Shown here one piece after another: positions 578 to 10,200 of a stretch of DNA of 63,321 nucleotides. Source of the DNA: Salisapilia sapeloensis CBS 127946 (lineage: Eukaryota > Protista > Oomycota); the NCBI GenBank assembly GCA_023334545.1, contig JAADVB010000092.1:1-63321 (forward strand). Reading direction: 5' to 3'. Both the position numbers and the translations under genes were made by a program. Under the pieces are notes generated by a model. That model had not been told where the DNA came from. It saw only the letters and a list, made by a program, of their open reading frames with translations, and ran no database searches. The stretch's first letter is position 1, and every line of letters starts with the position of its first letter.

Positions 578-2487
578 TCATGCCCGTTCATTGCGCTTAG
601 CGTACATCTGCACTTCCTCATAAATCCGCCCTACTCGACATTACCATTAGTCTTTCTCCCAAAGCATCAATATACCAACAAAGCATACCTTTGAGGCTCT
701 CCTTGTCTAATCGCACGTTCTCAAACTTCATATCAAGGGGCTTCATCTCCACCGATTCCGACTGCGTTCGTCGGACGGGGGCCAAAAATGGATGCTCCAG
801 AGCTTGATCCACCTACAACGTACAACATAAGTATACGTGACAGCACAAACACAACTACAAGTCGACATACCGTTATCCTTGACGATGGATTAAACGCAAG
901 CATCTTCTTCAGCAGATCCAGGGAGTCTGCAGGCGCACCTGGGAACAGTTCTCGCAAATCCCTCGGCTCTTTTCTCGACAATTTACGCAAGTACTGCTTC
1001 ACTTCTCCAAGTTCACCAATATCATCTTCTCCAGGTGTCCCAATGACATTAAAGATGACATTCAGCTGGTCCAACTTGTCCGAGTATGTCGTCGGTCGAT
1101 CTGCACTCAGTGGGAAGCATGACTTTCCAGGGAACAAAGGTACTCGGTCTTGATACCGTGGACAGCTCTCCACCTGCATACTTAAGAGCTCAGCAAAGAT
1201 ACACCCGACGCTCCACATGTCCACTGCAAAGTCGTAATCCTGCAGCAAAATCAACTCTGGCGCTCGGTACCAACGAGTCACGACGTGCTTTGTGAGCTGT
1301 CGACGAAACTTTGGCGCAGCGTCGCCTGAATTCGAGGACGGTGTCGAGGAAGCACTCGCAGGCGATGGCTCTGTGGTTCCAGCGTCCGACGTCGGGGACT
1401 TGGCGTCCTTGGGAGAGTACAGATGCTGTCGTAGTTCACTCATCTTCAGCTCCGGCTCGAGCACTCGAGAGAGGCCAAAGTCGCACAGCATGAGCGTGCA
1501 GTCCTCATTCAAAAGGATGTTAGCTGGCTTGATATCCCGATGGATGACATTGGCCGAGTGGAGGTACTTGACACCGCACAGAATCTGGTACAAAAACACT
1601 TGAATATGGCGAATGGTCAGGTATTGAGGACTCATGATGAGTTTGTGCAAGTCCGTGTCGAGGAAATCGAATACAAGGTACAGATCATTGAACGTATCGT
1701 AGCTCTGTGGTGGCACGACATCGATGAGCTTGATCACCTGCGGGTGGTTCAAGTGACGGAGGATGTAGATCTCACGATACAAGCGCTTGCAGTCGATCTC
1801 CTGGTCGAACACGTTCAAGATCTTTTTGATCGCCACCTTTTTCTGCGTCACACTGTCGAAGGCTTCCGCTACATGACCGTACGATCCTTTTCCCAAGAAC
1901 CTTACGAGCGTGTACCGACTCGTGACGTCCCAATTGGCAAAGTTGTTCAGCACCAACGGCGTCGCTCTCGGGGCTGCCGATGGAGTCGTGTGGTGGGTCT
2001 TGTTCGGATCTTGTGACGCATTCGTCGCGGCGTTCGCAGGAGCTTGGCCTGCTCGAGGGGCTGGCGTCGGCATAGTCTCGTAGCTTGCCATGCTCTGTCC
2101 GTTCGCGTCCTCCATGTTCCCGGACAAGTGATTCCCGACAGCAGGTGTCGGGGGCATCTCATGCAGAGGACCGCCCGGTGTCGGCGCACTGTAGAAAGAC
2201 GCACCAAAGTTGTCTTCATTGGGGTAATCGAGCGGAGGCGTCGGGGCCGCGCCATTAGCCAAAGTCGTCTCGCCCGTGGCTGCGACGAAGGAGCTGGTGG
2301 ATGCCATGGCGTTAGGACCTTGCGCCATCGGAGGCGTGGTCCCTGCAGGGCGCACAAACTTGTTTCCGCGCTTTAGCGCACTTCCTCCGACAGGCGTAGG
2401 CGAGGATATCATTCGCCGCTTGCGATTGTTTTCGCCGGCAGTGGGAGCTGCCGGAGAATCTTGTTTGTCATTCGAAACCTGGTCCAT
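578..2487 (-). CDS. Atypical MAP kinase (TKH activation loop), 3 exons
   Basis: GKGSYG, VAIKK, HRDIKPAN, DFG, LTKHVVTRWYRAPE and DMWSVGCIF motifs. Introns 813-870 and 631-688 (GTATGT/GTATGC...TAG) restore the C-terminus ...RITVDQALEHPFL...KGRIYEEVQMYAKRNERA*. Confidence 0.93.
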
Positions 2488-2815
2488 GCTCGATACTCTT
2501 TTCCTCGTGGCTGTTCCTACGGTATCTTTCTAATGCTGAATGCTCGGTAGTCCAAGGTATCTCGCGGGAAATGAGCAGGGTACGGCAGGCCTTTTTCCAG
2601 AATGGGCCTTGCTCCACTTCGTCCTGAGGGGCAATCGACTGGGCTTTTTCTCAGACCTCCCTCCAAATCAAGCGTATACTCATTCCTAGTTGTTTCCATC
2701 CATCCAATCAAACACCGGCATCTGATAGTCATGAGCCAATCGGAGGAAGGGTGCGACCTCACTTCAACTTCGATCGATCGTCTCCAAGCAACACTTTCTA
2801 TTTCGACTTGTCCGA

Positions 2816-3196
2816 CTACAAGTCAAGTAGCGCTTCCAGGTCATCTAGCTCTGTGTCTAATGCCAACGCACTCTGTTCTTGCTGTAAAATTTCTTGTCGT
2901 GCCTTTGATTCCTGAGCTTCGCGGCGACTGTTGGCTGCCGCTTCATCCCGCTGGCGTTGAGCCTCCTGCAGCTGCTGCAATCGATCTTTTGACTTTGAAA
3001 TAGTTTCTGTACTCTGGTCCGCAGCATGTGCATCTTGAACTGCTTTCTCCAACAATGCATGCGTCGTTTGCATCTCGCGCAGTTGCTGCTGTGCATGCTG
3101 CTTCAATTGCTGAACACGGCGCAATTGAGACTCAACCTGCCTTTCTCGCGCGCCCATCTCTTCCCGTGTATGTCCATGTCCATGTGCATCTTCCAT
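2816..3196 (-). CDS. Small coiled-coil protein of unknown function (~126 aa)
   Basis: Q/E/R/A-rich helical ORF; first ATG at 3196 (the ORF-track start at 3211 is GTG). Confidence 0.6.
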   Translation of the reverse strand: MEDAHGHGHTREEMGARERQVESQLRRVQQLKQHAQQQLREMQTTHALLEKAVQDAHAADQSTETISKSKDRLQQLQEAQRQRDEAAANSRREAQESKARQEILQQEQSALALDTELDDLEALLDL

Positions 3197-3332
3197 CGCT
3201 CTCTGCGCCACGCACGTCCGCCTGTCGCCTGCGATACCAAAACGATCGTCGCTGGTCGTAAGTCTCCGGATAAAGTATCAGAAATTATGCGGATGAACAA
3301 CCAATCGTGGACAGAGACATCGAGCTCGCGTC

Positions 3333-4710
3333 ATGGCATCTCCGATGAATGATCCTGCCCGCGCTTCGCAGCCGACTGGCGAAGAAGAAGATCTGTCGTA
3401 TCGTCTGCATGCTCTAAAAGTTTGTGGCCAATGGTCCGTGCAGGATGATGGAGACGGCCATCTTTTTTACTATGACCATGCCACCAAGCAGTCGCAATGG
3501 GGTGCACCACGCGAATTAGCTGCACAAGAAGGAGACTTTATGATGGAGCTTATGCTAGTTCAAGCTCTGGCAAAGTCTGGTGGCTGGAGTGCACATGACG
3601 CAGGCAACGGTACGCTCTACTATTTTAACCGGAAAACCCGTGAGTCTGTATGGGAGCGACCGGCAGAGTGGGGCATGCCAGAAGAGCCTGAAAGTCTACC
3701 TGAGCCTATGGATATACCACCTCCACCTCCTGAGCCACCAGTGGAGGAGAAGGCATCAGAACCTACATCTGAAGAAGAAGAAGAGGAAGAAGTGGAACTA
3801 ACAGAGGAAGAGATTCAGCAAGCGAAAGAAAAAGAAGAGAAGGCTGCCAAGCTCCGACACGAGTTTCAAGAACTGTTACGAGAGAAGAAGATCATGCCGT
3901 TCACCAAATGGTCAGTGGCACTTCCAAAAATCATCAACGACATGCGTTTCCAAGCGATCCCAACGTCCGTATCCCTGTTTATTCGTCCCTCTACACTACT
4001 AAACTATTCTGTTTGTACCTAATAGAATGGACGAGCGTCGTGCAGTCTTTGAAGACTTTGTCGCACATCGACGAGAAGAGCTTAAAGGAGAGAAGAAACA
4101 GCGACTGGATTCGGCAAAGAAAGACTTTGCCAAGCTCCTACAACAGTATCTCCGGCCATCCTTGCTGTCGTGCATTGTCAACGACACAAAGCCATTGTCA
4201 AAGTGGGTGAACGGGCAACGTTTATCCGTGATACTAGCTACCATGCATCAAGACAAGGGAGAGGAAGAGTACAAGCAGATCCAGACCAACGTTCTGGACT
4301 ATCTTCCGATGAAAAGCCAAGACAAGGTCGTGTCAAAAGTAGTCAAGGAGCTAGAGGAAGAAGGGAAGAGCGTGCAAGAGCAGATTAAATACGTCGAGAA
4401 GGAACTAGAAAAGCTCGTATCGAAAGAAGGGCGACAGAACGTATCGTTCGAGACACCTCGTGTCCAGAAACTGCTGCATCAAGTCGTCCCGAGAGGAGAA
4501 AATAATGATCAGATTTTATCGTTCGAGCAACAGCGTCAACTATTCCGTCGAGTCGTGCCACCTGGTGGGAAGACAGAACACAACCATGCGCAGGAGCGGT
4601 CGTACTACGGTCCATCTCATTCATCCAGCCGTCGCCGGAGTCCAAGTCCACGACATCGAAGACGATCTCATCGCTCTCGATCTCGATCCAGATCACAAAG
4701 TCGGAGGTAA
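3333..4710 (+). CDS. WW-WW/FF domain protein (Prp40/TCERG1-like) with an RS-rich tail
   Basis: Two WW domains (W..YY..T..SQW..P; W..YYFN..T..S.WE.P) and an FF domain (FQELLREKKI...KW...LPKI...RF...ERRAVFEDF) joined across intron 3965-4025; C-terminal RSRSRSQSRR. Confidence 0.85.
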
Positions 4711-4756
4711 CACGACGGAATCCTCTTTCAAAGTAAAAACATGTTGCTTCATTTTT

Positions 4757-7111
4757 CTATTCCGTTGCTGAAGTCGACGCATCGCTCGAGTCGTTTGAAA
4801 AGTCGACTGTCCGAAGTACGTACTGTGGTTCATCCACGATTTTCATCACGGCCTGGACACCATAGTCCAGCGGGATGGAGTAGATGCCATCCATATTCAC
4901 TTGCATATCCCATCCGAGTGATCTCACCGACACCCGTCGAGAGTTTCCTCGCCGGAATCGAATGTCGCCAAACGTCTCGTTGATGATCGGCTCTCGAACG
5001 ACAAAGCCCATGTCGAGCGAATCTTCCGGGAAGATGTGTGCCTTATTAAACCTACTTGCATCGTCAATACCTCTTTGAATAAGCTTATTTAGCAAGGTCG
5101 TACGCTTCTGTGAGTTCCGTCACCGTCTCATTCGTATGCGTATGACCCATGGCGCCAAGGACATTGTCCACTTGCTCCCGATACATCTGAGACTATGTGG
5201 TCATTAGCATCTACACGCCTAACGTATATAAAGAAAGAGTGTACAGCAGAGTAATGCCATGCGCTGGATCCTGTGCCGGTGGAAATGATGATGCCACTAC
5301 TCCGATGCGTCTCACGCTGGTGCTGATCCACGCCAATATTATAATGAGAAGGCCTCGACGCATCGCTCTCGGCGATAAACACTTCGTTCAAAGCGTATCG
5401 AGGGAGTTCATGCCAGAATCCGTCCTGGTTGACCATACCCACTCGAATCCGCTGTCGAACGCGCCATTGGAAATCGCCTGCTAACAGTCGATCTAATGCC
5501 ACCTTGAACCGGTGCATCGCACTGTCCACCCGATAGCAGCAGAGGTTGCCTTCGCTACGAGCTGGATCTGTGTTCAAGCCAGCAATCGGCAGCTCTCGAT
5601 TAATAAAGCTCGCCGCCTTTAGGAACGTACCGTCTCCACCTGCGGAGAACACCATGTCTGCATCATCAAACGTCGTGTCCGTCAAGTCATTCGCGTTCAC
5701 GACTTTAACGGAAATCCCATTCTCTGATAAACTGTATCATAGCATCAGTACATGCACACGTACAAACTGTACTATGATCCTACCTAGACGTGATATCATC
5801 AATCGCAGCCACATGGTGCTCATGACTCGCTCGTAGACGCTCGTAGACAAACCCTCGCATGGACATTTGCTTCCTCAACTCTTCTCTGCAAGCTCAAAAC
5901 ATAAGTGACATACGATACATTAATACGACCAGAGCCTACCCTGTGTAGCCATTCAACGCGCACTCGTGCTGGAATCTCGTCATTTTGTTTACGACCACTG
6001 CCTTCTTTAAATTCAGCATCGGCTTCCCAGGATACAACAACGGAGACTGGTCCGAAGTGTCTTTCCACTCGGTCCAATTCGCCTTCACCTCTTTCTCATC
6101 TTCCGCAGATATTCGTTCCGTAATGGCTCCTGTCGTACGCACGATTGGTCCTTCTTCCTTCACTTTTTCCTTCGCTCGACCCTTGTACGTCGCGGCGATA
6201 TACTCTTCCGAGACGATCATACGTGGCACGCGCTCTGCGATGGCCAGAAGCATCTCGTTGTCGTACACTGGTCTCTCGATCTTCATCCATCCCTTTGGAC
6301 TGAGCTTTTCATTCCAAGGACAGACCGAACGCATGTGTGTAAAGTACGGCGCGACCTCTCCGGACTGAGGGTCGGTACGCGTATAGTGTAGAATGTGTCC
6401 GTTGTGGATCTGGTCCACCATCTGACCAGACTCTTGCAACTCTCGGAACGTATCTTGGGACATGCGCTCCAACCGCGTTCGCATGGCCCACATCACCTCT
6501 GCATGTGCGACGACGATCACCCTTTTATTAGCACATTCGCGATGAAGAGTTGACAGTAGCCTATCTGCTCGCTGTGCTACTCCTGCCAAGGACTCTCCGC
6601 CTGGAGGGGTGTAGTAAAATCGGTCTAAATCACGTCGTTTTAGCTCGTCTTGCATCTTCTGAAAGCGTTCCTTTTCCGACATGAGATCCATCTGACCCCA
6701 ATCACGCTCCCGAATGAGCATCTCGGCGTACCAGTTCGCTCCAGGAAGACCCAATCGCCCAGCAGTCTCCATCGCTCGTAAATATTCCGATACGAGGTAC
6801 CGATCGAATTGCAGCAGCCCTTCCTTCTTCAGCCATTCGCCAGCTGCCACAGCCTGCTTCCGTCCTCGGTCCGTCAGTCGCCAATTGCAACTATGACGGT
6901 GCTGGAATTCTCCATAGAAAAGGCTGTGATCGCCGTCGATGGACCGTTGGCGAGCGACATTCCCTTCGCTCTCGCCGTGACGAATGAGCACGAGGTCAGC
7001 TAATCGAGGCTCCTTAAAGTGATGGATGCTCCTCTCTTGCGTAAAGTTGCATCGAGGTCGTTTCCGCGGTAGACAAACACTCGCGGACGATCGCGAGAGC
7101 AAACGGAGCAT
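4757..7111 (-). CDS. Histidine-phosphatase (PGM-like) / NAD kinase (NADK2-type) fusion protein with a mitochondrial-type presequence, 5 exons
   Basis: LVLIRHGESEGN, PPGGES and VIVVAH (His phosphatase), then KAVVVNKMTRF, SAGGDGTFLKAAS, YALNEVF, SSGIIISTGTGSSAW and VVREPIIN (NADK2-like). Introns 5886-5939 and 5732-5783 join the domains in frame; two more introns lie near 5190-5245 and 5050-5100. Confidence 0.88.
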
Positions 7112-7225
7112 GAAAATGGGATTTGGCTGTGTGTTTGTGCGGCTCGTAGGTTCGATACTGTATCCAGGTCGTTTGTCAAGCGACCTTTGAAGATATATTT
7201 ATGACACATAAAGTATTGAAAGGAC

Positions 7226-10200
7226 ATGAAGGAGCTAGAGGATGTCCAGGATGTACTTCATCAAGCTCAGATGCGTAGTAGAGAGATCCGACAACGACTT
7301 CGCGACTTTCATCTGCCTACGAAGACCAATGGGCTGAGTAGGAATACTGTTATTACATCAAAAAGTACGAATAAAGGTATATATAAGCCAGCAAAGCGCC
7401 ATCGCGATACTTTAGATGTTTCGATGGAAATCGAGCAAATGCAGTTGCACGATTGGGATTGGAGATGGGATGTGAGGCAGATTCAATCGGAAGTGTCGCG
7501 TAGGATAGCACGGGTTGACAGAGAATTACGCGACGTTCCAAAGTTAATGAGATACTGGAATATCGGTAGTCACTCACCTCGAACTCAGGTCGTCGAAAAG
7601 CAGAAGGCTAGAAGTACACATAGTCCTCGCAGACGTGTCAATCGTGTGAAGAAGCATCCAAAGTCAGAAAGGGTAGTTAAAGCTCCTTGCATCATCTCGA
7701 AAGTTGCAAGTAGTAAACCAAAGAGTGAAGCAGCAACGACTACATCTGATCCAGAGGATGTCCACGAGTCACCAACGTTATCTGTACCTGTTCAAGATGA
7801 TCTTGCTACGGATCAACAGCAGACTGTCATCAGCGATATTATTGAATCTACTGAAGCACAAGATAATGATGAAGAAGCAAGTAAAACACAATATGATGAC
7901 GATGCTTCACGAGTTACTCGTGTAACTGATGCTCCCACTTTACCAGCTATAGATGCAGACGATAATGTGGAGAATGATCAAGTACAAGAAACTCAAAAGA
8001 AAGATATTGTAGTCTCAGAAGAAGGCTCTACAACTAATAAGACGCCTCTGGTGGAGGAAACTTCCATACGAGTGAAATTGGAGTCACACGAACCCAAAAG
8101 CTATGTTAGTAGTGAGAAAGCTACAGAAGGAGAAGATAATTCTGATGGCAAAGTGTCATATGCTGAGGTTCAGACATCCATGGACTATCCTATTGGCTTA
8201 ACCTCACCATCGTCTTTTGGCCGACAAGTGCTTTCTCAGCATCAGACGATGTCGACGTCCTCGACGTATGGAGATTTAGCAGTACTTCCATCTAACAGCC
8301 ATCGCACCAGAGGTACAAGATCTTTAAATCCAAATGTCCTAAGGCGACTATTTAATGATCTCGATACGGACCGAGACGGGTACATTAACCGCATCGAAAC
8401 TTCCGTCGCCTTGCACCGCCTCCAGATAGCTGTACCAGTAAAAAAGCTAGCTTCATTCTTTCTATACATCAATCCACCGATCCAACACTCGATAAGTTCT
8501 CGTTCGCATACGATACAATCTGAAGCCTTGATCTCAAGACAACGATCTGTTATTAATTACCAGCAATTTGTCGCTTTCGTCACAGTAGCGTTCACACAGC
8601 AGCAGCAGCGACTAGTTCGCCACATACACCAGGAACAAAGTTTAATGTCTGGAGCAATAGCAAACCCGTGGCATAGTGACTCACATCAAGAGGAGTTGAA
8701 ACAAGACGATGAAGAGGAAGCGATGGAAGAGGAGAATGAAGTACCTGTTATTGACAATGTTCTACCAGACCATAAATATGATAACGAGGTACGTACGATC
8801 GCCTTGATCTCTCGTGAAATTGGATTTGGATATAGCTTAACGGCGTATGATGCATATTGTAGGGTCTTGTGGAAGTCGTACATGACTTGCTGACAACACA
8901 TTCAAACATGCTTCACAACGTCAAGCACTTAGAATTTACTGAGTCGGAGATGGATAGAGTTATTGCAGCAGAGCAATGGCTTCAGCAATGGTTTTACTCT
9001 GTTAATGCCGACGATCATTCGCTAAATGACTGTCATCCTCAGGAGGAGGAAGTGGTATGGCCAACCTGTATTCAAGAAGAGTATCAACCGCCATCTATAT
9101 CAGAGCTAAATGATAGCAAAGAAGACGAACACTCCAGAAGTGTCGAGTTAGATAATACAGTACAGACTCCAGTGCAACCATCGATGGTTGCAAGTGAAAA
9201 GTCATTTCCAGTAGAGGAAAGTAAAGTGACCGCATTATCAAACATTGGGGCTGTAGCTGCTGCTTTTCCAGTCGATTTATCACTTTTACCCAGAAGCACA
9301 CGGTCTGTAGATATCCACCCACAGGGCAATCGCATTGCGTTGCTTGAGAGGCTGTGCAGACGTCGTCGCAACATTCAACAGCAAGCCTTTACTATTAGCA
9401 AGTACGCATCTGCTGCAGACCGTTCCTCTTTTTCAGATAGCAACCCCATTCAGGATTCAATTGCTATTGATAAAAGCGTAGACAATAAACCAATTCAGCA
9501 ATGTATGGATGCTGAGAATCAAAGCGAGATTGCCAATCAATCCATCCAGTCTGACTCTAGTGGAATTGTAAAAAGCTTTAGCTCTAGCTCCCAATCAGAA
9601 TGTGCTAGTGTACTTCCTCTTCAAACTAAACATTTTTCAGCTACTCAATGGGAATATCCTAGTACTTCTAGCCACCAAAGTAGTTCCCAGAGCAGCTCGT
9701 TAACAAGTTGTCGTAGTGATATGACAAAAAGTAGTGGCATACATGATGCAGTCTCCGACTTTCCATTAGCTACTCGAAGACAACAGAGGAGACGGAATAT
9801 ATCGAGGAGAGCAGGGTCTTCGATCAGTCGCAGTAGCTATCGAAAATCAATTGAAAGTGAGGATCTATCGGAAGGCGAAATTGAAATGACGGAATCACTT
9901 GATCTTAGTGATGGAGAACTCACTGGTCAAGATTTAGCACGCGCTGTTCGGCTGCACAATAGAAGAGTGGTAAAGCATGAGAAAAAGAAGGCGCACCAGT
10001 TCTATCGACAATCTAGTAGTGATGGAAGTAAAAGCGATTACAAAGATAGCTCGGCAGAGTCTGGGGAACTGATCAACACGGTATGTCCATGTAGTCACTT
10101 ACAGCATCACTTCGAACTTTTGGCATTTAATTAATCAATAGAGTCTTCTGCGCCGCCGTTGTCATCGAACGCTTTACTCGTCTTCTGCAGCTTCATTCGA

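What the first reader, a model, noticed from the sequence alone, without database searches (positions are those of the whole stretch)
4757..7111. Histidine phosphatase fused to an NADK2-type NAD kinase: candidate single-chain mitochondrial NAD(H)/NADP(H) switch
Seen in sequence: the ORF track splits this into three unrelated-looking ORFs. Canonical introns at 5886-5939 (54 nt) and 5732-5783 (52 nt) join them in frame: ...KAVVVNKMTRFQHECALNGYTG|EELRKQMSMRGFVYERLRASHEHHVAAIDDITS|SLSENGISVKVVNANDL...AGGDGT. The NADK N-terminal strand begins inside the phosphatase ORF before any intron, so the fusion does not rest on splice calls alone. The phosphatase keeps RHG (6974-6982), a GES motif and the second His (VIVVAH). 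The kinase keeps GGDG (5629-5640), NE and the TGTGS motif. The N-terminus (MLRLLSRSSASVCLPRKRPR) is R/S-rich and acid-free. Established knowledge: NADK2 makes mitochondrial NADP(H); a bifunctional NADP phosphatase/NAD kinase exists in Methanocaldococcus (MJ0917), but it uses an inositol-monophosphatase fold, not a His phosphatase. Inference: this may be a convergently built kinase/phosphatase pair acting on the 2'-phosphate of NADP(H), or the phosphatase domain may be a metabolite sensor. I cannot confirm that it is undescribed.
Basis: partly seen in the sequence, partly recalled or inferred. Interest (0 to 1): 0.82.

Follow-up and report, generated by a model that had tools for sequence, protein, structure and literature searches.

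The report
Histidine phosphatase fused to mitochondrial-type NAD kinase
An oomycete gene, confirmed by RNA, joins an uncharacterised histidine phosphatase to an NADK2-type NAD kinase, and bacterial relatives of that phosphatase sit inside NAD(P) gene clusters next to NAD kinase, so it is a good untested candidate for a new kind of NADP(H) phosphatase.

Summary
Minus-strand 4757-7111 is one transcribed gene of five exons and four GT-AG introns (54, 52, 52 and 52 nt). The gene encodes 714 aa: a basic presequence, a branch-1 histidine phosphatase domain with all catalytic residues, a disordered linker, and an NADK2-type NAD kinase (E 1.5e-30 to human NADK2).

The architecture is not new as a database object. 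Every oomycete sampled has it (P. infestans PITG_00257), and so do Rhodelphis and several unidentified protists. It is auto-named 'phosphoglycerate mutase' or 'NAD kinase'. I found no paper describing or testing it.

New here: the phosphatase belongs to a tight family of about 268 aa. Stand-alone bacterial members, mostly Patescibacteria, are 49-54% identical to the window's domain. In 5 of 41 bacterial loci they lie inside NAD salvage/NADP clusters, against 0 of 47 control loci. Twice they are directly adjacent to NAD kinase, in both gene orders.

Fusion and operon context together point to an NAD(P)-linked substrate. The most likely one is the 2'-phosphate of NADP(H), at about 0.5. This is inference and no activity was tested. 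One protist clade has lost the nucleophile histidine, which suggests an added regulatory role.

The parts
4757..7111 (-). Whole coding region (ATG at 7111-7109, stop TAG at 4759-4757). Five exons, 2145 nt, 714 aa.
   Evidence: Collinear with oomycete orthologues.
7112..7187 (-). 5' UTR covered by the RNA contig. It holds no upstream ATG.
   Evidence: X1 record 2 ends at 7187; sequence read.
5940..7111 (-). Exon 1: presequence, phosphatase domain, linker and the first strand of the NADK fold.
5886..5939 (-). Intron 1, 54 nt, GT..AG.
   Evidence: Joint 5885/5940 in X1, X2, X5 and X6.
5784..5885 (-). Exon 2 (aa 391-425).
5732..5783 (-). Intron 2, 52 nt, GT..AG.
   Evidence: Joint 5731/5784 in X1 and X2.
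5245..5731 (-). Exon 3: NADK2 core with GGDG, motif 1, NE and TGTGSSAW.
5193..5244 (-). Intron 3, 52 nt, GT..AG.
   Evidence: Joint 5192/5245 in X1, X2, X5 and X6.
5104..5192 (-). Exon 4 (aa 588-617).
5052..5103 (-). Intron 4, 52 nt, GT..AG. The tool reports 5050-5101 with 'cut +2'.
   Evidence: Joint in X1, X2 and X5; frame check.
4757..5051 (-). Exon 5: C-terminal beta part of the NADK2 fold, plus the stop codon.
4721..4756 (-). 3' UTR covered by the RNA contig. The convergent neighbour gene ends at 4710.
7001..7111 (-). N-terminal 37 aa: 9 Arg/Lys and 2 Glu, none acidic in the first 25. Probable mitochondrial presequence.
   Evidence: Residues 1-47 of orthologue P0290 are disordered in AF2. 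Localisation was not tested.
6212..7000 (-). Histidine phosphatase domain (aa 38-300) of the ~268-aa family.
   Evidence: Pfam, family alignments A1 and A3, AF2 pLDDT 95.6.
6959..6982 (-). RHGESEGN motif: Arg44, nucleophile His45 and Asn51.
6695..6712 (-). RERDWG motif, holding the conserved Glu that is the proton donor in this superfamily.
6590..6640 (-). KRRDLDRFYYTPPGGES stretch: basic residues plus the GES motif. It aligns with the stretch of FBPase-2 that binds the substrate's second phosphate; that role is recalled from memory.
   Evidence: Alignment to 1c7z.
6488..6514 (-). VVAHAEVMW motif, holding the second catalytic His (His203).
6017..6211 (-). Linker (aa 301-365), rich in Lys and Glu. 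The corresponding stretch of the orthologue is predicted disordered.
   Evidence: P0290 residues 328-367 have pLDDT below 50.
4796..6016 (-). NADK2-type NAD kinase domain (aa 366-702), interrupted by the four introns.
5626..5640 (-). GGDGT motif of NAD kinases.
5563..5589 (-). PIAGLNTDP, which is 'motif 1' of the C5orf33/NADK2 family.
   Evidence: motif definition from PMC3535332.
5374..5394 (-). ALNEVFI (the NE motif).
5257..5301 (-). SSGIIISTGTGSSAW, holding the Trp that corresponds to human Trp319.

Best explanation
This is one nuclear gene of an oomycete; the nearest sampled relative is Globisporangium. It makes a 714-aa protein that is probably imported into mitochondria. The C-terminal half is an NADK2 (mito-clade) NAD kinase that makes NADP(H) from NAD(H). 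A flexible linker of about 40-65 residues joins it to an N-terminal, catalytically competent branch-1 histidine phosphatase. That phosphatase belongs to a distinct and uncharacterised family of about 268 aa.

The phosphatase most likely removes a phosphomonoester from an NAD(P)-related nucleotide. The simplest candidate is the 2'-phosphate of NADP(H). On that reading, a single chain carries the opposing kinase and phosphatase that set the mitochondrial NAD(H)/NADP(H) ratio, as PFK-2/FBPase-2 does for fructose-2,6-bisphosphate and MJ0917 does in methanogens.

Shown: the gene structure, its transcription and splicing, the identity of both domains, intact catalytic motifs, conservation of the fusion, and the bacterial gene context. 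Inferred: mitochondrial location, the phosphatase substrate, and any reciprocal regulation.
For: - Gene model and splicing.
- Kinase identity: human NADK2 structures are the best sequence hits by 22 orders of magnitude. The orthologue model matches 7r4l with target-normalised TM 0.86 and 35% identity. GGDG, NE, motif 1 and the conserved Trp are present.
- Phosphatase competence: every invariant family residue is kept, namely both Arg, both His, the Glu and the Asn. The AF2 model has pLDDT 95.6.
- Conserved fusion: 64 of the proteins fetched carry both domains. They come from Saprolegnia, Aphanomyces, Lagenidium, Pythium, Globisporangium, Phytophthora, Peronospora and Hyaloperonospora, from Rhodelphis, and from several unidentified protists. 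The fused phosphatase domains form one clade with SH-aLRT 95. NAD kinase is the only fusion partner seen.
- Independent gene context: stand-alone bacterial members that are 49-54% identical to the window's domain lie inside co-directional clusters. These clusters hold ADP-ribosylglycohydrolase, NUDIX, NAPRT, NadD, NAD kinase, PRPP synthase and NadE. This is seen in L001, L012, L092 and L094/L095, and partly in L039.
- Adjacency to NAD kinase occurs in both orders: NADK then phosphatase in L001, phosphatase then NADK in L094.
- Frequency: 5 of 41 family loci against 0 of 47 other His_Phos_1 loci, Fisher p = 0.02.
- Closest solved fold and sequence: the FBPase-2 domain of PFKFB. This is the classic histidine phosphatase paired with a kinase on the same phosphoester.
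Against: - No enzyme activity is known for any member of the family.
- Most bacterial loci (36 of 41) show unrelated contexts such as Fic, bpX and AlkZ.
- The five NAD clusters come from related small-genome bacteria, so they are not fully independent.
- Operon context points to NAD(P) metabolism in general, not specifically to the 2'-phosphate.
- A kinase and phosphatase on one chain would run a futile cycle unless they are regulated, and no regulatory feature was identified.
- One fusion clade has lost the nucleophile His, so catalysis is not universally required.
- The AF2 pTM of 0.55 gives no defined contact between the two domains.
- Mitochondrial location rests only on composition and on homology to NADK2.
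Confidence: 0.5

Rival explanations
1. The phosphatase acts on a different phosphoester of the NAD salvage network. Candidates are NaMN or NMN (giving the riboside), 2'-phospho-ADP-ribose or ADP-ribose-1''-phosphate, or a ribose bisphosphate or PRPP-related compound. On this reading it is fused to NADK2 for pathway co-localisation rather than as a direct antagonist.
For: The bacterial clusters are salvage clusters: ARH, NUDIX, PncA-like, NAPRT, PRPP synthase, NadD and NadE. The best curated-model match is alpha-ribazole-5'-phosphate phosphatase CobC, a nucleotide-like 5'-phosphatase, though it scores far below its cut-off. A viral contig pairs the family with ARH only.
Against: NAD kinase is the only fusion partner seen in eukaryotes. 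Direct adjacency to NADK in both gene orders singles out the NADK step. Amoebozoa keep the phosphatase without NADK2, a fact that is neutral between the two readings.
Confidence: 0.22
2. The domain is mainly regulatory. It would be either a ligand sensor that controls the kinase allosterically, or a protein phosphatase acting on the kinase or on other mitochondrial proteins (as PGAM5 does), rather than a metabolite phosphatase.
For: In the clade holding the P0005 cluster (seven sequences) and P0305, the RHG histidine is replaced by Pro or Ala. The rest of the domain and all kinase motifs are kept. This shows the domain is retained without catalysis.
Against: All oomycete and most other fusions, and all bacterial members, keep every catalytic residue. 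The stand-alone bacterial forms sit in metabolic operons with no kinase attached. The flexible linker and low pTM give no evidence of a fixed regulatory interface.
Confidence: 0.12
3. The domain is a genuine 2,3-bisphosphoglycerate-dependent phosphoglycerate mutase, as UniProt auto-names it, serving the mitochondrial lower glycolysis of stramenopiles.
For: Stramenopiles do run lower glycolysis in mitochondria (PMC6198282, PMC5715807). One divergent Saccharibacteria member lies directly after PGK (L025), and one lies near enolase and pyruvate kinase on the opposite strand (L037). Some dPGM-like residues are shared; this comparison is from memory.
Against: All NCBIfam dPGM models score 20-52 bits against cut-offs of 81-421. 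Identity to any solved or reviewed dPGM is only about 24%. The experimentally localised P. infestans mitochondrial PGM is PITG_13749, whereas the fusion orthologue is PITG_00257, which is absent from that paper's PGM list. The L025 protein is only 36% identical to the window's domain, against 49-54% for the NAD-cluster members. The glycolytic neighbours occur at about chance frequency. The fusion also occurs outside stramenopiles.
Confidence: 0.04
4. The fusion is an artefact: two adjacent genes whose transcripts were merged by the contig assembler.
For: Logan contigs can bridge overlapping transcripts. The X2 contig also runs into the convergent downstream gene.
Against: The NADK first strand lies in the same exon and frame as the phosphatase. 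All four splices keep one reading frame of 714 codons. No stop or start codon separates the domains. More than 20 orthologous full-length models, MMETSP 'complete' transcripts and a second organism's contigs show the same arrangement.
Confidence: 0.01

Closest known systems
Human mitochondrial NAD kinase NADK2 (C5orf33; PDB 7N29, 7R4J-M)
   Same: The C-terminal half is homologous: E 1.5e-30, about 35% identity, and target-normalised TM 0.86 for the orthologue model. It has GGDG, NE, motif 1 (PxxGxNTDP) and the TGTGSxAW tryptophan. An N-terminal basic presequence is expected to target it to mitochondria.
   Different: It carries a 263-aa histidine phosphatase domain and a linker ahead of the kinase. 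The 'C5orf33 additional region' (about human 175-218) is mostly absent, as shown by the gap between query positions 98 and 109.
MJ0917 / MMP1489 bifunctional NADP phosphatase/NAD kinase of methanogens (NCBIfam NF010678)
   Same: One chain combines an NAD kinase with a phosphatase domain. This is the precedent that selection can favour such a pair.
   Different: That phosphatase has the inositol-monophosphatase/FBPase fold, and its kinase is a classical NadK. NF010678 matches only the kinase half here, at 59 bits against a cut-off of 493. The organisms are archaeal, not eukaryotic.
6-phosphofructo-2-kinase/fructose-2,6-bisphosphatase (PFKFB1-4)
   Same: A kinase and a branch-1 histidine phosphatase on one chain act on the same phosphoester. 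Its phosphatase domain is the best solved sequence match (E 4e-10) and one of the best fold matches (target-normalised TM 0.86-0.87). Some isoforms have weak or dead phosphatase domains (from memory), like the His-less clade found here.
   Different: The kinase fold is unrelated, the domain order is reversed, the substrate is a sugar, and identity is only about 23%.
Known NADP(H) phosphatases: Nocturnin, MESH1 and Arabidopsis CCR4C
   Same: They carry out the reaction proposed here. Nocturnin is partly mitochondrial (PMC12557515).
   Different: Their folds are unrelated. Nocturnin and CCR4C belong to the CCR4 endonuclease-exonuclease-phosphatase family; MESH1 is an HD-domain enzyme (from memory). 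None is fused to an NAD kinase.
Alpha-ribazole phosphatase CobC, phosphoserine phosphatase PspA, glucosyl-3-phosphoglycerate phosphatase and dPGM (other branch-1 histidine phosphatases)
   Same: They share the core fold and the catalytic quartet.
   Different: Identity is 20-26%. All curated models score far below their cut-offs. The family here has its own C-terminal extension of about 60 residues and its own conserved motifs (IHNxQILHYTR, RSVCPW).

Membership tests
Histidine phosphatase superfamily, branch 1 (Pfam PF00300) | Score above the Pfam gathering threshold | tested here: met
   95.9 bits against 21.7, aa 40-226.
Histidine phosphatase superfamily, branch 1 (Pfam PF00300) | Catalytic set: RHG nucleophile His, two Arg, a second His and an acidic proton donor | tested here: met
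   Arg44-His45-Gly46, Arg111, Glu135 and His203 occupy the invariant family columns.
Histidine phosphatase superfamily, branch 1 (Pfam PF00300) | The alpha/beta fold of the superfamily | tested here: met
   AF2 pLDDT 95.6. Target-normalised TM is 0.79-0.87 to CobC, FBPase-2 and PspA.
2,3-BPG-dependent phosphoglycerate mutase (the UniProt auto-name of the orthologues) | Reaches the curated equivalog or subfamily cut-off | tested here: not met
   The best dPGM model, NF002339, scores 52 bits against 316. TIGR01258 scores 30.6 against 81.7.
2,3-BPG-dependent phosphoglycerate mutase (the UniProt auto-name of the orthologues) | Is the mitochondrial PGM of oomycetes | tested here: not met
   The mitochondrial PGM is PITG_13749 (PMC5715807). 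The fusion orthologue is PITG_00257.
2,3-BPG-dependent phosphoglycerate mutase (the UniProt auto-name of the orthologues) | Mutase activity | not testable with these tools
   Needs an enzyme assay.
NADK2 / C5orf33 (mito-clade) NAD kinases | Closer to NADK2 than to classical NADKs | tested here: met
   E 1.5e-30 against 3.6e-8. Foldseek gives E 2e-35 and target-normalised TM 0.86, against at best 1e-15 and 0.77 for classical NADKs. Identity to animal NADK2 is 31-38%.
NADK2 / C5orf33 (mito-clade) NAD kinases | GGDG and NE/D motifs | tested here: met
   GGDGT at aa 456-460 and ALNEVF at aa 538-543.
NADK2 / C5orf33 (mito-clade) NAD kinases | Motif 1 PX-GXN(T/S)DP and the conserved Trp (human W319) (PMC3535332) | tested here: met
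   PIAGLNTDP at aa 473-481 and TGTGSSAW ending at aa 583.
NADK2 / C5orf33 (mito-clade) NAD kinases | Motif 2 S-G-X(C/M) (PMC3535332) | tested here: inconclusive
   The window has SSGIIIS. Other oomycetes have SSGIIVC or SSGILMC. The last position is Ile here, and I could not parse the published notation with certainty.
NADK2 / C5orf33 (mito-clade) NAD kinases | The 'C5orf33 additional region' | tested here: not met
   About 45 human residues (175-218) correspond to only about 10 residues here.
NADK2 / C5orf33 (mito-clade) NAD kinases | Mitochondrial location and NAD kinase activity | not testable with these tools
   Only the presequence-like composition is available.
MJ0917-type bifunctional NADP phosphatase/NAD kinase (NF010678) | IMPase-fold phosphatase half and a full-length model score | tested here: not met
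   59.4 bits against a cut-off of 493, and the match covers only model positions 344-480, which is the kinase half.
PFKFB bifunctional enzymes | 6-phosphofructo-2-kinase domain N-terminal to the phosphatase | tested here: not met
   No 6PF2K match appears in Pfam. Only the phosphatase half aligns.

The most novel reading that the evidence does not exclude
The ~268-aa histidine phosphatase family is a dedicated NADP(H) 2'-phosphatase that has gone unrecognised. On this reading it stands alone in Patescibacteria and other bacteria, in some giant viruses or phages and in Amoebozoa, and is fused to NADK2 in oomycetes, Rhodelphis and other protists. It would supply the missing bacterial NADPase gene. 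In protist mitochondria it would form a single-chain NAD/NADP switch, with a pseudo-phosphatase variant that has become a purely regulatory module.
Probability: 0.4. Interest if true: 0.8.

Novelty: new variant of a known kind. Interest (0 to 1): 0.62.

Why it matters
NAD kinase is the only route to NADP, but the reverse enzyme is poorly known. The enzymes named in the papers I read are the IMPase-type half of MJ0917, MESH1, Nocturnin and, since 2025, plant CCR4C. None of these papers names a bacterial NADPase gene.

A histidine-phosphatase-type NADPase would add a fourth, unrelated solution. It would explain how protist mitochondria and minimal-genome bacteria balance NAD against NADP. It would also give a directly testable candidate protein of about 30 kDa that should be easy to express.

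The work also corrects public annotation and the literature. The oomycete proteins named 'phosphoglycerate mutase', and the bacterial ones named 'NAD+ kinase' by IMG, are probably misnamed. Oomycetes do possess a mito-clade NADK, contrary to the gene sets reported in PMC6675116.

In oomycete pathogens this enzyme may be the only mitochondrial source of NADP(H). That makes it an ordinary target for functional study.

Tried and rejected
- **Frameshift or tiny intron near 5080-5100.** I first modelled the 3' end this way because the ORFs change frame there. The RNA contigs showed two ordinary 52-nt introns instead.
- **Other fusion partners of the phosphatase family** that might give further clues: none found. 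Long family members carry no other Pfam domain.
- **Neighbour survey.** Pfam on 135 neighbours of 37 bacterial loci gave NAPRTase as the top specific recurrent family. Most contexts were unrelated. Unknown neighbours in L002, L006 and L091 are not NAD kinases.
- **The dPGM reading.** I tested it through curated models, gene context and the literature, and rejected it as unlikely.
- **Fold and atlas searches.** Foldseek against PDB and Swiss-Prot, and the ESM Atlas, returned only generic histidine phosphatases. No characterised close relative turned up.
- **Full-length AF2 of an orthologue.** It gave two confident domains but pTM 0.55, so nothing can be said about how the domains face each other.
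- **Literature.** Searches for the fusion or for a His-phosphatase NADPase found nothing. Subscription journals are not covered.
- **Bacterial promoter/terminator scan** of the region: irrelevant for a eukaryotic gene.
- **The window's own spliced protein** could not be passed to the remote tools. I searched its pieces and used orthologue P0290 for the full-length model.
Full report
**What is in the sequence**

The minus strand of 4757-7111 carries three long ORFs: 5936-7111, 5128-5700 and 4757-5095. Pfam places His_Phos_1 in the first ORF (aa 40-226, 95.9 bits against a cut-off of 21.7). It places the NAD_kinase N- and C-terminal domains in the second.

**Transcription and gene model**

Eight public RNA-type runs hold this stretch, and four of them hold 83-85% of its sampled words. 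I laid four runs on 4500-7400.

Two contigs that are 100% identical to the window (2259 and 3069 nt) cover 4721-7187. They skip four segments: 5886-5939 (54 nt), 5732-5783 (52 nt), 5193-5244 (52 nt), and 5050-5101 'cut +2', which is 5052-5103 (52 nt).

All four segments begin with GT and end with AG. Their G+C content is 38-41%, against 49% for the window.

I had first suspected a frameshift at the 3' end, but the RNA shows ordinary introns.

Joining the five exons gives 2145 nt in one frame, 714 codons, ending at the TAG at 4757-4759. The transcript contig starts 76 nt upstream of the ATG and contains no earlier ATG.

Runs of a second organism, about 96% identical, show the same spliced connection from the phosphatase to the GGDG exon. 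Contigs cannot prove a single molecule. However, the first strand of the kinase fold (KKAVVVNKMTRFQHE, 5963-6007) lies in exon 1 in the phosphatase frame, and no stop or start codon intervenes.

**The kinase half**

Exon 3 alone matches human mitochondrial NADK2 structures (7r4j, 7n29) at E 1.5e-30. The next best match is a classical NAD kinase at 3.6e-8.

It has several features that Ohashi et al. describe for C5orf33 homologues (PMC3535332; coordinates):
- GGDGT;
- motif 1 of the C5orf33 family (PIAGLNTDP);
- the NE motif;
- TGTGSSAW with the conserved tryptophan.

The 'additional region' of human NADK2 is largely missing.

An AlphaFold model of the 76%-identical Globisporangium orthologue P0290 matches 7r4l at E 2e-35. 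The target-normalised TM is 0.86 with 35% identity. Classical NADKs reach target-normalised TM up to 0.77 at 14-19% identity.

**The phosphatase half**

An exhaustive HMMER search with exon 1 found 2157 relatives. The strongest fall into two groups: long proteins that also carry NAD_kinase, and a large set of stand-alone proteins of about 268 aa.

The stand-alone proteins form a tight family (alignment A1, mean column identity 54%). All 18 aligned sequences, the window's domain among them, share the following:
- invariant Arg-His-Gly;
- a second Arg;
- the Glu of RERDWG;
- the His of the CHGEVMW block.

A 70-sequence alignment gave an AlphaFold model of window aa 24-310 with pLDDT 95.6.

Foldseek finds only generic branch-1 histidine phosphatases at 20-26% identity. 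These include CobC, the FBPase-2 domain of PFKFB (target-normalised TM 0.86-0.87), PspA, glucosyl-3-phosphoglycerate phosphatase and dPGM. By sequence, the best solved match is also FBPase-2 (E 4e-10).

No curated NCBIfam model comes near its cut-off. CobC scores 54 against 163, and the best dPGM model scores 52 against 316. The domain is therefore a competent histidine phosphatase of an uncharacterised subfamily.

**Distribution of the fusion**

The architecture is universal in the oomycetes sampled: Saprolegnia, Aphanomyces, Lagenidium, Pythium, Globisporangium, Phytophthora, Peronospora, Peronosclerospora and Hyaloperonospora. The window's protein is collinear with them at 71-76% identity.

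It also occurs in Rhodelphis marinus, in MMETSP and EukProt transcriptomes, and on metagenomic eukaryotic contigs. In total, 64 fetched proteins carry both domains.

Many public gene models are broken, with missing exons or predictions of exon 1 alone. This probably helped hide the architecture.

Public names are automatic: 'Phosphoglycerate mutase (2,3-diphosphoglycerate-dependent)', 'NAD kinase 2', 'ATP-NAD kinase' or 'hypothetical protein'. The P. infestans orthologue is PITG_00257.

A quick maximum-likelihood tree puts all fused phosphatase domains in one clade (SH-aLRT 95). That clade is sister to an unfused clade that includes the amoebozoans Filamoeba and Cavenderia. Both are nested among bacterial stand-alone proteins. 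The root is uncertain, so the direction of transfer is not established.

**Independent evidence from bacteria**

The stand-alone proteins come mostly from Patescibacteria, with some from Armatimonadota, Actinomycetota and others. I examined 41 family loci.

Five contain a co-directional NAD(P) cluster with the phosphatase inside it:

| Locus | Source | Gene order |
|---|---|---|
| L001 | Candidatus Buchananbacteria | ARH, NadD, NUDIX, NAPRT, NAD kinase, phosphatase, radical SAM, PRPP synthase, NadE |
| L012 | Candidatus Doudnabacteria | NadD/NADK, ARH, NUDIX, NAPRT, phosphatase, PRPP synthase |
| L092 | not named | NadD-NADK fusion, ARH, NUDIX, NAPRT, a deoxyribosyltransferase-like gene, phosphatase (overlapping its stop), radical SAM, NadE |
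| L094/L095 | not named | PncA-like, ARH, NAPRT, phosphatase, NAD kinase, PRPP synthase, NadE |
| L039 | Saccharibacteria | NAPRT, phosphatase, NadE, NadD |

The NAD kinase is the immediate neighbour in two clusters, and it lies on opposite sides of the phosphatase in the two.

None of 47 loci holding other His_Phos_1 proteins, with the same total length, has any of these genes within the flanks. The one-sided Fisher p is 0.02. The five positive loci are not fully independent.

The window's domain is 49-54% identical to the four best cluster-embedded proteins. Those four are only 52-62% identical to each other.

The remaining loci show unrelated contexts.

**Interpretation**

Two independent kinds of genome evidence tie this phosphatase family to NAD(P) metabolism, and specifically to the NAD kinase step. 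One is the recurrent fusion to NADK2 in eukaryotes. The other is operon membership with a different, classical-type NAD kinase in bacteria.

The simplest chemistry is removal of the 2'-phosphate that the kinase adds. This would make the protein an NADK/NADPase pair.

There are two precedents for such a pair. One is MJ0917, whose phosphatase has a different fold (PMC8553519). The other is PFKFB, whose phosphatase has the same fold as this one.

I put about 0.5 on NADP(H) or a closely related 2'-phospho-nucleotide as the substrate. I put about 0.75 on some NAD(P)-pathway phosphoester.

The KRRD..R..PPGGES stretch aligns with the part of FBPase-2 that holds the substrate's second phosphate. That role is recalled from memory. 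It would be consistent with a substrate carrying further phosphates, but it is weak evidence.

**Rivals**

1. **Another salvage intermediate** (NaMN or NMN, ADPR phosphates). The operons are salvage operons, so this cannot be excluded.
2. **A regulatory role.** In the clade holding the P0005 cluster (seven sequences from four transcriptome assemblies and three contigs) and P0305, the nucleophile His is replaced by Pro or Ala while everything else is kept. This is a real pseudo-phosphatase beside an intact kinase. It suggests the domain also binds something useful to the kinase. Oomycetes keep all catalytic residues.
3. **A true dPGM for the mitochondrial glycolysis of stramenopiles.** The following argue against it:
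   - The curated dPGM models fail.
   - The localised P. infestans mitochondrial PGM is a different gene, PITG_13749 (PMC5715807), not PITG_00257.
   - The one PGK-adjacent bacterial member is a divergent relative, only 36% identical.
   - A scan note reports a separate PGM with a presequence elsewhere in this genome. I did not test it.
4. **An assembly artefact.** This is very unlikely for the reasons given under the gene model.

**Location**

The first 37 residues have nine basic and two acidic residues, with none acidic in the first 25. Orthologues have comparable extensions, with 6-12 basic and mostly 0-2 acidic residues. AlphaFold leaves residues 1-47 of the orthologue disordered. Together with homology to NADK2, this makes a mitochondrial matrix location likely. 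It is not shown.

**Novelty**

The architecture is catalogued but, as far as the searchable literature goes, undescribed. Searches for the fusion or for a histidine-phosphatase NADPase found nothing.

A 2025 paper lists the known NADP phosphatases as MJ0917, MESH1 and Nocturnin, and adds CCR4C (PMC12557515).

A 2019 survey of eukaryotic NADKs reports only cyto-clade genes for oomycetes (PMC6675116), so it appears to have missed this gene.

I classify the finding as a new variant of a known kind: a bifunctional NADK/NADPase-like enzyme built from a different phosphatase fold and a different kinase clade. Its function is still to be shown.

Noticed in passing
P0005 cluster (P0005, P0151-P0156) and P0305: One non-oomycete fusion clade has lost the RHG nucleophile histidine (VRPGESEGS or VRAGESEGS). 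It keeps the rest of the phosphatase domain and all NAD kinase motifs, so it is a conserved pseudo-phosphatase next to NADK2.
   Followed up: partly
P0247 and P0356 (Filamoeba sp.), P0021 (Cavenderia fasciculata XP_004356851.1): Amoebozoa carry the same phosphatase family with an N-terminal extension but without NADK. They are sister to the fusion clade. PMC6675116 reports that Amoebozoa lost the mito-clade NADK.
   Followed up: partly
Bacterial proteins P0176-P0279: JGI/IMG names many His_Phos_1-only proteins of about 268 aa 'NAD+ kinase'. This is probably a transitive annotation error seeded by the eukaryotic fusion proteins.
   Followed up: no
L092:1-1104 and L012:46-1353: Patescibacteria encode a single ORF that matches both NaMN adenylyltransferase (NadD) and NAD kinase. 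This is a NadD-NADK fusion at the head of the NAD cluster.
   Followed up: partly
L001:6822-7766, L092:6947-7900, L092:4811-6004: A conserved radical-SAM gene (E 1e-125 between the two loci) follows the phosphatase in two NAD clusters. A Nuc_deoxyri_tr2-like gene precedes it in L092. Their role in NAD metabolism is unexplained.
   Followed up: no
L096 (177-kb IMG/VR contig) 2451-6771; L097 and L098 (giant-virus MAGs, GC 18-20%): Family members occur on viral contigs. In L096 an ADP-ribosylglycohydrolase, a PTH2 and an unannotated 444-aa ORF lie just upstream of the phosphatase.
   Followed up: partly
window 4710-4757: The convergent upstream-strand gene (4027-4710, +) and this gene stop only 46 nt apart. 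One RNA contig (X2, 3069 nt) runs through both, so their 3' ends overlap or nearly overlap.
   Followed up: no
window 5721-5790, runs X5 and X6: In the related organism B, the exon 2/3 boundary region differs from the window: a few replaced letters at the joint, with 17 letters against 16 in X6. It could be a real indel or alignment fuzz in low-depth contigs.
   Followed up: no
PMC5715807 supplement: Pythium ultimum is listed with two 'mitochondrial PGM' genes (PYU1_G003922 and PYU1_G005969), whereas other oomycetes have one. One of the two may be the fusion orthologue counted as a PGM.
   Followed up: no
L252-type context (P0252) and L006: Some stand-alone family members sit directly after bpX0/bpX1/bpX3 genes or between Fic genes. 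These are contexts typical of conflict systems.
   Followed up: no
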